Assembly (NCBI RefSeq): GCF_947568905.1
Contig: NC_079173.1
Location: 17,670,001-17,734,000 of the forward strand
Reading direction: 5' to 3'
From: Ostrea edulis
Lineage: Eukaryota
Length of the DNA: 64,000 bases
The notes under the pieces are model-generated. The model did not search any database and was not told where the DNA came from. It saw only the letters and a program-made list of their open reading frames with translations. Shown piece by piece: positions 51,046 through 52,333 of the stretch; position 1 is the first letter of the stretch, and each line of letters opens with the position of its first letter. Made by a program: the position numbers and the translations under genes.

Positions 51046-52333
51046 ATGAGCCTGAGTAGAAGTCGTGAGAAGTCGTCAGTCACAAACAGTGCTAGCAGTC
51101 ACGGCCCAGTGAATGTCACATACCCGGGTATATCCACCGCACCTACGCTAACGCAGGAGATAATAAGCACGATGCAAGCAATACCTAATATACAAACAAC
51201 ATTGGGGGAATTATCGGAATCTCTCAGAGTGATCAAAGAACTAACTCAAGATATAAAGAACATTAAGAATGACCTGTGGGAGGAAGATGGTTTCGACTTC
51301 CGTATCTCTCATATTGCTGAACAACAAGAAGTGGACTCAGGAAACATTCAGGTGCTGAAGCAAGAGAACAAAATGTTGAAACAAGATATAGATATGTTAA
51401 AATCTGTAGTTATTATCTTAGACAGAACCGTCAGAAAACAGCAAAGCGAGATCACAGATTTAAAGTCAAGATCAATGAAGCAGAACTTACTTCATTCACA
51501 ATTTACCCGAAGAAGAGAATGAAAATCTTTTCAAGAAAATCCCACAATTGATTAAAGAATACCTGGGAGTCGAAACAACTTTTGCAAACATACATCGAAA
51601 CGGGCCTAAAAATCCGGGTAGACCAAGAACTATTACGGGTCGACTAGAGAAATTTACTGATAAGGAGAAAGTCCTCCAAGCACAGAAAGACAAAAGAAAT
51701 AGCGAAGGGTCTGGCTCTACAGAACAATCAAATACACCTTTCTACATTACCCCACAAAGACCAGTAGAGGTAGCTGAAAATCGGAAAAAACTCCAAGAAA
51801 TAAGTAACCGGTATTGGAAAGAGAATGTGAAAACACGTTTCGTAGGAGACAAGTTAGTTTTTCCTAACGGAAACACATACAAAGAAAAAGTGTTAAAACC
51901 AAAGCCTGAAAACATTTTGCTAGTGGATCAAGCAGAAAAAGAGGCACTTCAACAGATCCAGATGTCGACACTAGAAACCTCCACAGAAGGGAACGATTTT
52001 AAAATCGCGGCATCTACCACAGTGACCTTTAACCAGGTCAGAAACTTCTATAAAAAAGTTGTTATGAACTCAAATTACTCAAACGCGGATCACAATATAT
52101 TGGTATATCGATTCACAGACAAAAACGGTTTGATCCACGAGGGGTATAACGACGATGGTGAGCACGGGGCTGGGAGAAGACTTCTTAAAGATCTCCAATC
52201 TCTCCATGTTACAGACATGACATGTATCATCTCTAGATTCTTCGGAAAATATCTTGGCTATCGTAGATTCCAAATTATGGAAAACCTCACGGCAGACATT
52301 GTTCTCGCGCACCGAGGTGAAACGTTGGGGTAA
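51046..52333 (+). CDS. L1 ORF1p: coiled coil, RRM-like domain and C-terminal IMPACT/YigZ (UPF0029)-like domain; +1 frameshift near 51490
   Basis: RSMKQNL/IHNLPEEENE..IHRNGP..PGRPRTI (L1 ORF1 RRM pattern); ADHNILVYRF..NDDGEHGAGRRLL..ISRFFGKYLGYRRF (IMPACT/YigZ signature); ~428 aa if repaired. Confidence 0.82.

What the first reader, a model, noticed from the sequence alone, without database searches (positions are those of the whole stretch)
51900..52333. L1/Tx1 ORF1p ends in a captured IMPACT/YigZ-like domain
Seen: after the coiled coil and RRM-like part, ORF1 continues in frame into FKIAAS...ADHNILVYRF...NDDGEHGAGRRLLKDL...ISRFFGKYLGYRRF. It lies inside a TSD-bounded, poly(A)-tailed full-length element, so it is element cargo. 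Established: this pattern is the signature of the UPF0029/YigZ domain found in IMPACT proteins, whose full-length forms antagonise GCN2 translational control. L1 ORF1p normally ends in a small CTD; accessory ORF1 domains I know of are PHD, esterase and CCHC. Inference: a retrotransposon lineage has recruited a translation-control or nucleic-acid-binding domain into its RNP protein, possibly to influence host stress translation or ORF2 expression. I do not know a functional description of this fusion.
Basis: partly seen in the sequence, partly recalled or inferred. Interest (0 to 1): 0.8.

Follow-up and report, generated by a model that had tools for sequence, protein, structure and literature searches.

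The report
Oyster LINE ORF1 protein with IMPACT-type domain
[quoted passage not shown] Many old lineages of this jumping gene have kept the domain under selection, which gives a new setting for studying a domain whose job is still unknown.

Summary
Window 51953-52330 encodes a UPF0029/IMPACT "ancient" domain (Pfam PF01205, 55-57 bits against a cut-off of 27). The domain-only AlphaFold model has pLDDT 95 and matches TT1547 and YigZ at Z 17 and Yih1 at Z 11.

The domain is the in-frame C-terminus of an L1-type ORF1p (coiled coil, RRM, CTD; best fold match is the human L1 ORF1p trimer). It lies inside a LINE with a 13-bp TSD and a poly(A) tail at 50856-57869, whose ORF2 (APE, RT, zinc finger) is L1-like.

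The genome is Ostrea edulis and holds at least 79 such domains. Subfamilies at 98, 50, 37 and 33% ORF1 identity all show ORF1-UPF0029, a spacer, then APE-RT. So do a Saccostrea contig and six of seven metagenome contigs examined.

Between lineages, synonymous sites are saturated while the domain's dN stays low (omega about 0.08, like the RRM and CTD). The family's signature residues are invariant.

In a tree, all LINE-borne domains sit apart (support 98) from the RWD-bearing IMPACTs. That group includes the oyster's own intron-split IMPACT gene, which is only 32% identical. The capture is therefore old and probably single.

There is no RWD domain, so IMPACT-like GCN2 antagonism is not supported and the function is inferred only. 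I found no paper describing this fusion. This scan had already noted it elsewhere in the same genome. The window copy itself is defective.

The parts
50843..50855 (+). 5' target-site duplication ATGTCGGACTGAC
   Evidence: Exact 13-mer found only here and at 57870-57882; 0.06 matches expected by chance.
50856..51045 (+). 5' UTR of the LINE
   Evidence: Other genomic copies align from 50858 onward. The first ATG of ORF1 is at 51046.
51046..51468 (+). ORF1 N-terminal disordered part (to about 51180) and coiled coil (about 51181-51468)
   Evidence: AlphaFold helices 46-78 and 83-141. The A1 profile hits the human L1 ORF1p coiled coil 6fia at E 0.007. Pfam gives only weak coiled-coil-type hits.
51469..51916 (+). 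ORF1 RRM and CTD (L1 type). In this copy the frame is broken near 51491 by a one-base length difference against intact copies.
   Evidence: The A1 profile hits human L1 ORF1p RRM-CTD structures: 2ldy at E 9e-4, 2yko at 3e-3, 2w7a at 0.018. The best Foldseek match of the whole model is the human L1 ORF1p trimer 2yko, E 2.5e-7. Frame break.
51917..51952 (+). Short helical linker between the CTD and the UPF0029 domain
   Evidence: AlphaFold helices 287-291 and 295-302. Poorly conserved in alignment A1.
51953..52333 (+). UPF0029 / IMPACT 'ancient' domain (ORF1 residues 303-428) plus stop codon
   Evidence: PF01205 at 55-57 bits against a cut-off of 27. A1 profile against Yih1 6bqi: E 9e-20. Domain model pLDDT 95, with Z 16.9 to 2cve, 16.8 to 1vi7 and 11.0 to 6bqi. 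Invariant residues Y354, D369, E372, G374, A375, G376, G404, R407.
52334..53048 (+). Inter-ORF spacer of about 0.7 kb, non-coding, with a C-run near 52535
   Evidence: No conserved ORF. Copies differ here by indels of 4, 9 and 16 bases. Relatives also have long spacers of about 0.4-1.4 kb.
53049..57675 (+). ORF2: APE about 53073-53714, RT about 55453-56124, zf-RVT about 57154-57366. In this copy it is disrupted by an exact 843-bp tandem duplication (53594-54436 and 54437-55279) and a frame break near 55411.
   Evidence: Pfam Exo_endo_phos, RVT_1 and zf-RVT. Human L1 ORF2p matches at E 1e-86, against R2 at 3e-20. Duplication. Frame break.
57676..57869 (+). 3' UTR with AATAAA at 57853-57858 and an A-run at 57856-57869
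   Evidence: Sequence read directly. Copies align up to 57870.
57870..57882 (+). 3' target-site duplication ATGTCGGACTGAC

Best explanation
Window 51953-52330 encodes a genuine UPF0029 (IMPACT/YigZ 'ancient') domain. It forms the C-terminus of the ORF1 protein of an L1-superfamily LINE of Ostrea edulis.

Shown:
- The ORF1p architecture is coiled coil, RRM, CTD, UPF0029.
- It is followed by a long spacer and an APE-RT ORF2, and the whole unit is mobile (TSD and poly(A)).
- The same architecture defines a large, old clade of LINEs in oysters, pearl oysters and unnamed (mostly metagenomic) sources.
- The domain has evolved under purifying selection as strong as on the RRM and CTD, and it keeps the family's signature residues.
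- All LINE-borne domains form one group apart from RWD-bearing IMPACT proteins, including the host's own IMPACT.

Inferred origin: a single old capture of the ancient domain, without the RWD domain, from a eukaryotic IMPACT-type gene.

Inferred mechanism (about 30-35% confidence): the domain is a working module of the L1 ribonucleoprotein. It gives ORF1p an extra contact with RNA or with the translating ribosome, for example to keep ORF1p on its own mRNA or to help ORF2 translation across the unusually long spacer. It does not act on GCN1/GCN2.

The window copy itself is a young but defective insertion.
For: - Domain identity: Pfam 55-57 bits; family profile against Yih1 at E 9e-20; domain model pLDDT 95 with Z 16.9, 16.8 and 11.0 to TT1547, YigZ and Yih1.
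- L1-type ORF1p core: PDB profile hits to human L1 ORF1p RRM-CTD, trimer and coiled coil; top Foldseek match 2yko.
- L1-like ORF2: E 1e-86 to human ORF2p.
- Element: TSD and poly(A); copies align end to end at 98-99.5%.
- Conserved architecture: at least 79 UPF0029 matches in the genome. The order CC, RRM/CTD, UPF, APE(-RT) holds in subfamilies at 98, 50, 37 and 33% ORF1 identity, in Saccostrea, and in metagenome contigs at 27-77% identity.
- Breadth: 68 of the 145 new best representatives at the 50% cluster level carry the L1-ORF1 N-part.
- Selection: L031 against L052 gives UPF dN 0.158 and dS about 2 (omega about 0.08), compared with RRM 0.07 and CTD 0.05. Other lineage pairs show pS 0.8-0.96 with pN 0.19-0.36 in the domain. 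Young copies have omega near 1, as expected for dead insertions.
- Invariant Y, D..E.GAG and G..R motifs.
- Single origin apart from IMPACT: a branch with SH-aLRT 98. Host IMPACT has introns in the domain and is 32% identical.
- Hints for an RNA or ribosome role: the next-best fold neighbours are RNA- or ribosome-binding proteins of the S5-domain-2-like fold, such as YicC RNase, uS9, exosome RNase PH subunits and EF-G domain IV. IMPACT variants are fused to the MJ1316 RNA cyclic-end-recognition domain or to a HEPN domain. Yih1 and IMPACT associate with ribosomes (PMC4503747).
Against: - No experiment or direct computational test bears on function. The ancient domain's function is stated to be unknown (PMC7140605, PMC4503747).
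- The mapped ribosome-, actin- and Gcn1-binding region of Yih1 overlaps the linker, not clearly the ancient domain.
- Fold neighbours at Z 5-8 may reflect only a common arrangement.
- Pfam's L1 ORF1 model (Transposase_22) does not hit, so the L1-type core rests on profile-to-PDB and fold matches.
- Transcription was not shown: only short contigs from RNA libraries touch the element.
- No bacterial outgroup could be obtained, so the tree is unrooted, and the AU test of one clade did not finish.
- Taxa outside Pteriomorphia could not be named.
Confidence: 0.85

Rival explanations
1. The domain acts like IMPACT/Yih1: it damps the GCN2 (eIF2-alpha kinase) stress response so that the element is translated under stress.
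For: Homology to the IMPACT ancient domain. IMPACT proteins inhibit GCN2 (PMC6550387 abstract).
Against: GCN2 inhibition works through the RWD domain competing for GCN1; overexpression of the RWD alone suffices (PMC7140605). No RWD is detectable in ORF1p by Pfam at E up to 10. In the tree, RWD-bearing proteins are a separate group.
Confidence: 0.05
2. The domain is a catalytic or small-ligand-binding module acting on nucleotides or RNA ends, rather than a passive RNA or ribosome contact.
For: The invariant acidic and glycine-rich loops (D369, E372, G374-A375-G376, G404, R407) are kept from bacteria to LINEs. The fold class includes RNases and kinases, such as YicC endoribonuclease at Z 8.3, RNase PH and GHMP kinases. 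Some IMPACTs are fused to an RNA cyclic-end-recognition domain.
Against: No activity has been reported for any UPF0029 protein in the papers read. Z values of 5-8 are in the range of common arrangements.
Confidence: 0.2
3. The domain is a decoy that mimics host IMPACT. It titrates whatever partner the host ancient domain binds, to the element's advantage, for example by evading a host control.
For: The LINE-type profile still scores the host IMPACT domain at 87 bits and other IMPACTs at about 90-96 bits, so the surface motifs are shared.
Against: No partner of the ancient domain is known. The LINE clade is old and has diverged to 32% identity from host IMPACT, with no sign of tracking it.
Confidence: 0.1
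4. The domain is a neutral passenger, or an annotation or assembly chimera: a fragment of an IMPACT retrocopy that happens to lie after ORF1 in some copies.
For: The window copy is broken, and LINEs can transduce host sequence.
Against: The frame is continuous in natural 428-aa ORF1s. The same fusion occurs in subfamilies down to 27% identity and in other genera. Lineage-level omega is about 0.08. Signature residues are invariant. Independent assemblies carry it.
Confidence: 0.02
5. The ORF1-UPF0029 genes are domesticated host genes rather than transposon genes.
For: NCBI annotates several as ordinary genes, such as 'protein IMPACT homolog' or 'uncharacterized protein LOC...'.
Against: They are multi-copy, nearly always lie upstream of APE-RT in the same orientation, sit inside TSD/poly(A) units, and decay neutrally after insertion (omega about 1 among young copies).
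Confidence: 0.03

Closest known systems
Mammalian LINE-1 ORF1p (type II ORF1p: coiled coil, RRM, CTD; PDB 2YKO, 2LDY, 2W7A, 6FIA)
   Same: Same domain order and fold for the first ~300 residues, including the long trimer-type coiled coil. Encoded upstream of an APE-RT ORF2 in a poly(A)-tailed element with TSDs.
   Different: Carries an extra ~125-residue UPF0029 domain after the CTD. Sequence similarity is too low for Pfam Transposase_22. The inter-ORF spacer is about 0.7 kb, against tens of bases in human L1 (spacer length of human L1 is from my own knowledge).
IMPACT / Yih1 (RWD plus ancient domain; PDB 6BQI)
   Same: Homologous ancient domain with the same signature loops. The LINE-type profile scores eukaryotic IMPACTs at about 87-96 bits.
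   Different: No RWD domain and no charged RWD-to-ancient-domain linker, so no basis for GCN1 competition. Intronless. A separate clade with 98 support. Only 32% identity to the oyster's IMPACT.
Bacterial YigZ / TT1547 (UPF0029 plus a C-terminal domain; PDB 1VI7, 2CVE)
   Same: Best structural matches of the domain model: Z 16.8-16.9, rmsd 2.3-2.4 A over 115-119 residues.
   Different: Sequence relation is much weaker than to eukaryotic IMPACT: the A1 profile gives E 0.01-0.17 against 9e-20. No bacterial locus carries the LINE-type motif with homology. The YigZ C-terminal domain is absent.
Other accessory domains of LINE ORF1 proteins (CCHC knuckles, PHD, esterase)
   Same: The same principle: a modular ORF1p that has picked up a cellular domain. 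This comes from my own knowledge of Khazina & Weichenrieder 2009 and Metcalfe & Casane 2014; the latter is listed in the references of PMC10294476.
   Different: UPF0029 is not among the ORF1 domain types I know. No paper in the searchable library links UPF0029, PF01205 or IMPACT to a retrotransposon.

Membership tests
UPF0029 / Impact_N domain family (PF01205) | Match to the Pfam model above its gathering score | tested here: met
   55.3-57.1 bits against a cut-off of 27 for the window copy; 55.3 bits for the intact ORF1.
UPF0029 / Impact_N domain family (PF01205) | Conserved signature loops (aromatic-R after strand 3, D-x-G-E...G-x-G loop, R-x-x-G...G-x-x-R-F) | tested here: met
   Y354, D369, E372, G374, A375, G376, G404 and R407 are invariant in 31-33 LINE ORF1s. 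They align to the same residues of Yih1 and host IMPACT. One glycine of the usual GG pair is missing in this subfamily.
UPF0029 / Impact_N domain family (PF01205) | YigZ-like fold | tested here: met
   Domain model pLDDT 95. Z 16.9 to 2cve, 16.8 to 1vi7 and 11.0 to 6bqi; the next hit is at Z 8.3.
IMPACT / Yih1 proteins (GCN2 antagonists) | N-terminal RWD domain that binds GCN1 | tested here: not met
   No RWD in Pfam at E up to 10. My RWD profile hits 24 IMPACT-like representatives but none of the proteins that carry the L1-ORF1 N-terminal part.
IMPACT / Yih1 proteins (GCN2 antagonists) | Groups with RWD-bearing IMPACTs in a domain tree | tested here: not met
   All 24 RWD-IMPACTs, including the host's, lie across a 98-supported branch from the 114 LINE-type domains.
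L1-type (type II) ORF1p | Coiled coil followed by RRM and CTD | tested here: met
   A1 profile against PDB: 2ldy at 9e-4, 2yko at 3e-3, 6fia at 7e-3, 2w7a at 0.018. Foldseek top hits are the human L1 ORF1p trimer, E 2.5e-7.
L1-type (type II) ORF1p | Match to Pfam Transposase_22 (PF02994) | tested here: not met
   No hit at E up to 10. The relationship is visible only by profile or fold.
L1 superfamily LINE (L1/Tx1 group) | ORF2 with APE and RT closest to L1 ORF2p; poly(A) tail; TSD | tested here: met
   Exo_endo_phos, RVT_1 and zf-RVT. Human L1 ORF2p at E 1e-86 against R2 at 3e-20. TSD and A-run.
Tx1 clade specifically | Placement of the RT with reference Tx1 elements rather than L1 proper | not tested
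   No reference Tx1 sequences were available. PMC10294476 lists Tx1 as the L1-group clade in its bivalve list, so Tx1 is plausible by inference only.

The most novel reading that the evidence does not exclude
The UPF0029 'ancient' domain is a ribosome- or RNA-engaging module. A whole clade of L1-type LINEs uses it on ORF1p to stay on, or act upon, the translating element mRNA, for instance to permit ORF2 translation across a 0.4-1.4-kb spacer or to enforce cis-preference. The LINE context would then reveal the long-unknown molecular function of a domain conserved from bacteria (YigZ) to humans (IMPACT).
Probability: 0.25. Interest if true: 0.8.

Novelty: new variant of a known kind. Interest (0 to 1): 0.62.

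Why it matters
LINE ORF1 proteins are known to be modular, but I know of no report of a UPF0029/IMPACT domain among their accessory domains, and I could not find one. Three consequences follow.

1. It adds a new ORF1p architecture, one that is old, diverse and under selection. That makes it a functional innovation and not a curiosity of one copy.

2. UPF0029 is conserved across all domains of life, yet its function is described as unknown. A parasitic RNA-binding protein that needs it, without the RWD partner domain, gives a second, independent context for working out what the domain binds or does.

3. It explains a class of mis-annotations. Oyster gene models named 'protein IMPACT homolog' or 'myosin-J heavy chain-like' are LINE ORF1s. 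The real IMPACT gene is the intron-bearing locus on contig C1 near 36.95 Mb.

Tried and rejected
- Pfam Transposase_22 and RWD against ORF1: no hits.
- Bacterial or archaeal relatives by degenerate pattern in genome contigs: 147 pattern matches, none homologous. The genome search 'relatives' is not possible for this genome. No bacterial outgroup was therefore available and the tree is unrooted.
- AU test that LINE-type domains form one clade: not finished within the time limit. I rely on the 98-supported branch instead.
- Naming the organisms behind divergent LINE-type representatives: the listing of cluster members gave only unnamed ENA, JGI and Logan records. A third word search with a divergent alignment (A3) gave no named relevant hits. 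The ESM Atlas gives 'commonest Mollusca' for the two nearest clusters, which is a lead only.
- Expression: the listed RNA-library runs hold only short contigs, at 52914-53145 and 53862-54086. One run of uncertain kind has a 139-base piece inside the domain, at 52158-52296. This does not show transcription.
- One of seven metagenome contigs examined (L055) has ORF1-UPF0029 without a detectable ORF2 and lies next to Polinton-type polB genes. I take it as a truncated copy.
- Rejected readings: recent capture from the host IMPACT, neutral passenger, domesticated host gene, and GCN2 antagonism (see the rival explanations).
- Literature: no paper links UPF0029, PF01205 or Impact_N with a retrotransposon or ORF1. 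Subscription journals and Repbase Reports are not covered.

Full report
**1. What is at the coordinates**

- Pfam PF01205 (UPF0029) matches it at 55.3 bits, and matches 51902-52330 alone at 57.1 bits. The curated cut-off is 27 bits and the match covers profile positions 11-105 of 107.
- Upstream, 51046-51522 encodes a coiled-coil segment in another frame.
- Natural intact copies elsewhere in the genome join both parts into one 428-aa ORF1, for example L031:1866-3149.
- The window copy differs from those copies by one base in length near 51491.

I used the natural intact copy for all protein analyses and repaired nothing.

**2. The element**

- The 13-mer ATGTCGGACTGAC occurs exactly twice in the window, at 50843-50855 and 57870-57882, with 0.06 matches expected by chance.
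- The second copy follows an A-run (57856-57869) that overlaps an AATAAA signal.
- Other genomic copies align with 50858-57870 at 98-99.5% identity.
- ORF2 carries Exo_endo_phos, RVT_1 and zf-RVT. It matches human L1 ORF2p structures at E 1e-86, against 3e-20 for R2 proteins.

The element is therefore an L1-superfamily LINE. Tx1 as opposed to L1 proper was not tested. A survey of bivalve LINEs names Tx1 as the L1-group clade in its list of bivalve LINE clades (PMC10294476).

This copy is dead:
- ORF1 is frame-broken.
- ORF2 holds an exact 843-bp tandem duplication, 53594-54436 and 54437-55279.
- ORF2 has a second frame break near 55411.

**3. Architecture of ORF1p**

I aligned 33 full-length homologues (A1) and obtained an AlphaFold model with mean pLDDT 81.7, above 90 over the C-terminal domain. 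The model shows:
- a disordered N-terminus;
- two long helices (46-141);
- an alpha/beta domain (about 145-222);
- a second small domain (about 233-291);
- a short helical linker;
- a compact domain from 303 to 428.

The A1 profile searched against PDB sequences gives:
- Yih1 (6bqi) at E 9e-20 over positions 295-407;
- human L1 ORF1p RRM-CTD 2ldy at 9e-4, the trimers 2yko and 2ykp at 3e-3, the coiled coil 6fia at 7e-3, and the RRM 2w7a at 0.018.

Foldseek ranks the human L1 ORF1p trimer first (E 2.5e-7), then Yih1, TT1547 and YigZ.

A domain-only model (pLDDT 95) aligned to 48,161 PDB representatives gives TT1547 at Z 16.9, YigZ at Z 16.8 and Yih1 at Z 11.0. The next hit is at Z 8.3.

ORF1p is thus an L1-type coiled coil, RRM and CTD protein with a UPF0029 domain added at the C-terminus. 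Pfam Transposase_22 and RWD do not hit.

**4. Is the fusion a property of the family?**

The genome is Ostrea edulis, by the source names of near-identical proteins.

- A six-frame search finds at least 79 matches to the domain. About 19 are at 93-100% identity; further groups are near 50% and near 37%.
- In 10-kb loci from four subfamilies (98, 50, 37 and 33% ORF1 identity), the order coiled coil, RRM/CTD, UPF0029, APE, RT is kept on one strand, and ORF2 diverges in step.
- Nearly all of the 30 best loci show the same order as far as their 1.5-kb flanks reach.
- Homologues with PF01205 are annotated in Saccostrea (two species), Crassostrea virginica and Pinctada imbricata. Some are labelled 'protein IMPACT homolog' or 'myosin-J heavy chain-like'. 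These taxa belong to two orders of Pteriomorphia.
- A Saccostrea contig and six of seven metagenome contigs, carrying ORF1s at 27-77% identity, have the APE-RT ORF2 downstream after a 0.4-1.4-kb spacer. The exception (L055) looks truncated.
- An exhaustive profile search with the domain alone finds 7322 proteins at E up to 1e-3. Of the 145 new representatives among the best 150, 68 carry the L1-ORF1 N-terminal part (my HMM), 24 carry RWD, and 47 are short fragments.
- UPF0029-less canonical ORF1s also exist in the same genome, for example L058:7799-8881 on the minus strand (360 aa). The domain is therefore an addition that marks one clade.

**5. Selection**

I compared the O. edulis ORF1 with its 77%-identical relative L052.

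| Region | dN | dS | omega |
|---|---|---|---|
| UPF0029 domain | 0.158 | about 2 (saturated) | about 0.08 |
| RRM | | | 0.07 |
| CTD | | | 0.05 |
| Coiled coil | | | 0.06 |

More distant lineage pairs show pS 0.8-0.96 with pN 0.19-0.36 in the domain. Young copies within a family show omega near 1, as expected for insertions that decay neutrally.

Eight residues of the domain are invariant in all LINE ORF1s aligned: Y354, D369, E372, G374, A375, G376, G404 and R407. They coincide with the family's signature loops.

**6. Origin**

The oyster's own IMPACT gene lies on contig C1 near 36.952-36.956 Mb. Its ancient domain is split into three exons by phase-0 introns. It is 32% identical over 94 residues to the LINE domain, yet scores 87 bits against the LINE-domain profile.

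In a maximum-likelihood tree of 145 domains, a branch with SH-aLRT 98 puts the 24 RWD-IMPACTs (host included) and six other non-LINE proteins on one side. All 114 LINE-type domains, plus one unclassified protein, are on the other.

Bacterial members are far more distant in sequence: the A1 profile gives E 0.01-0.17 against 9e-20 for Yih1. No bacterial locus with the LINE-type motif is homologous.

The simplest reading is one old capture of the ancient domain, without RWD, from a eukaryotic IMPACT-type gene. Two caveats apply: the tree is unrooted, and the AU test did not finish.

**7. Function**

Nothing here tests function directly.

- The papers read state that the ancient domain's function and partners are unknown. 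GCN2 inhibition works through the RWD domain competing for GCN1 (PMC7140605, PMC4503747).
- Three weak hints point to RNA or the ribosome. First, the fold belongs to the S5-domain-2-like group, whose next-best neighbours are RNases, ribosomal proteins, exosome subunits and EF-G domain IV (Z 5-8, possibly only a common arrangement). Second, some IMPACT variants add an MJ1316 RNA cyclic-end-recognition domain or a HEPN domain. Third, Yih1 and IMPACT associate with ribosomes.
- The host protein is itself an RNA-coating, cis-acting L1 protein, and all these elements have an unusually long inter-ORF spacer.

Taken together, I commit to 'an RNA- or ribosome-contact module of the L1 RNP' as the most likely mechanism, at about one chance in three. 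'Enzyme or ligand-binding module' (about 0.2) and 'decoy of host IMPACT' (about 0.1) are the main rivals.

**8. Expression**

Expression was not established.

**9. Novelty**

No paper in the searchable library links UPF0029, PF01205 or Impact_N with a retrotransposon or ORF1.

The same scan had already flagged the same kind of fusion on other DNA of this genome. A follow-up there reached the same general reading (s1-274686, s1-311840). My tests were made independently on this window and on other loci.

I class it as a new variant of a known kind: a modular LINE ORF1p with a new accessory domain.

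Noticed in passing
window 53594-55279: Exact 843-bp tandem duplication inside ORF2 (at least 300 nt at 100% identity). It is absent from other genomic copies and from a 6.5-kb contig of an independent run. It is either a very recent event in this copy or an assembly artefact.
   Followed up: partly
G000:C1:36952625-36956282 (L047/L048): The real host IMPACT gene. Its ancient domain lies in three exons (36952625-719, 36952961-3128, 36956148-282) with phase-0 introns, and a charged linker exon lies just upstream. 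Several NCBI models named 'protein IMPACT homolog' in oysters are instead LINE ORF1s.
   Followed up: partly
proteins P0126, P0144, P0071, P0064, P0066, P0068: Unusual UPF0029 architectures among the closest non-LINE relatives: RWD + UPF0029 + MJ1316 (RNA cyclic-end-recognition domain), HEPN_DZIP3 + two UPF0029, and proteins with two or three tandem UPF0029 domains. These are possible clues to an RNA-linked role for the domain.
   Followed up: no
window 49092-49610 (-): A 172-aa ORF with a DExH-type helicase motif (…VVVDECH…), RecQ-like in appearance, just upstream of the LINE insertion. Not analysed.
   Followed up: no
window 52334-53048 and relatives' spacers: The inter-ORF spacer is long in every relative examined (about 0.4-1.4 kb). 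It varies by indels among copies and contains a C-run near 52535; similar C-runs lie in the 5' flank at about 50574-50588 and 50655-50664. How ORF2 is translated across it is open.
   Followed up: no
L055 (ENA contig, 12368-16385): An ORF1-UPF0029 copy without ORF2 lies 3 kb from two DNA_pol_B_2 (Polinton/Maverick-type) genes.
   Followed up: no
L058:7799-8881 (-), G000:C4 about 47.45 Mb: A 360-aa canonical L1-type ORF1 (coiled coil, RRM, CTD) without UPF0029, in the same genome. A PIF/Harbinger-like 211-aa ORF lies nearby.
   Followed up: partly
L032 flanks (G000:C10 about 26.7 Mb): An internally deleted copy of the family has a repeated flank segment of about 30 bp, offset by 15-17 bases from both element ends. 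This may be a long TSD with extra untemplated or transduced bases.
   Followed up: no
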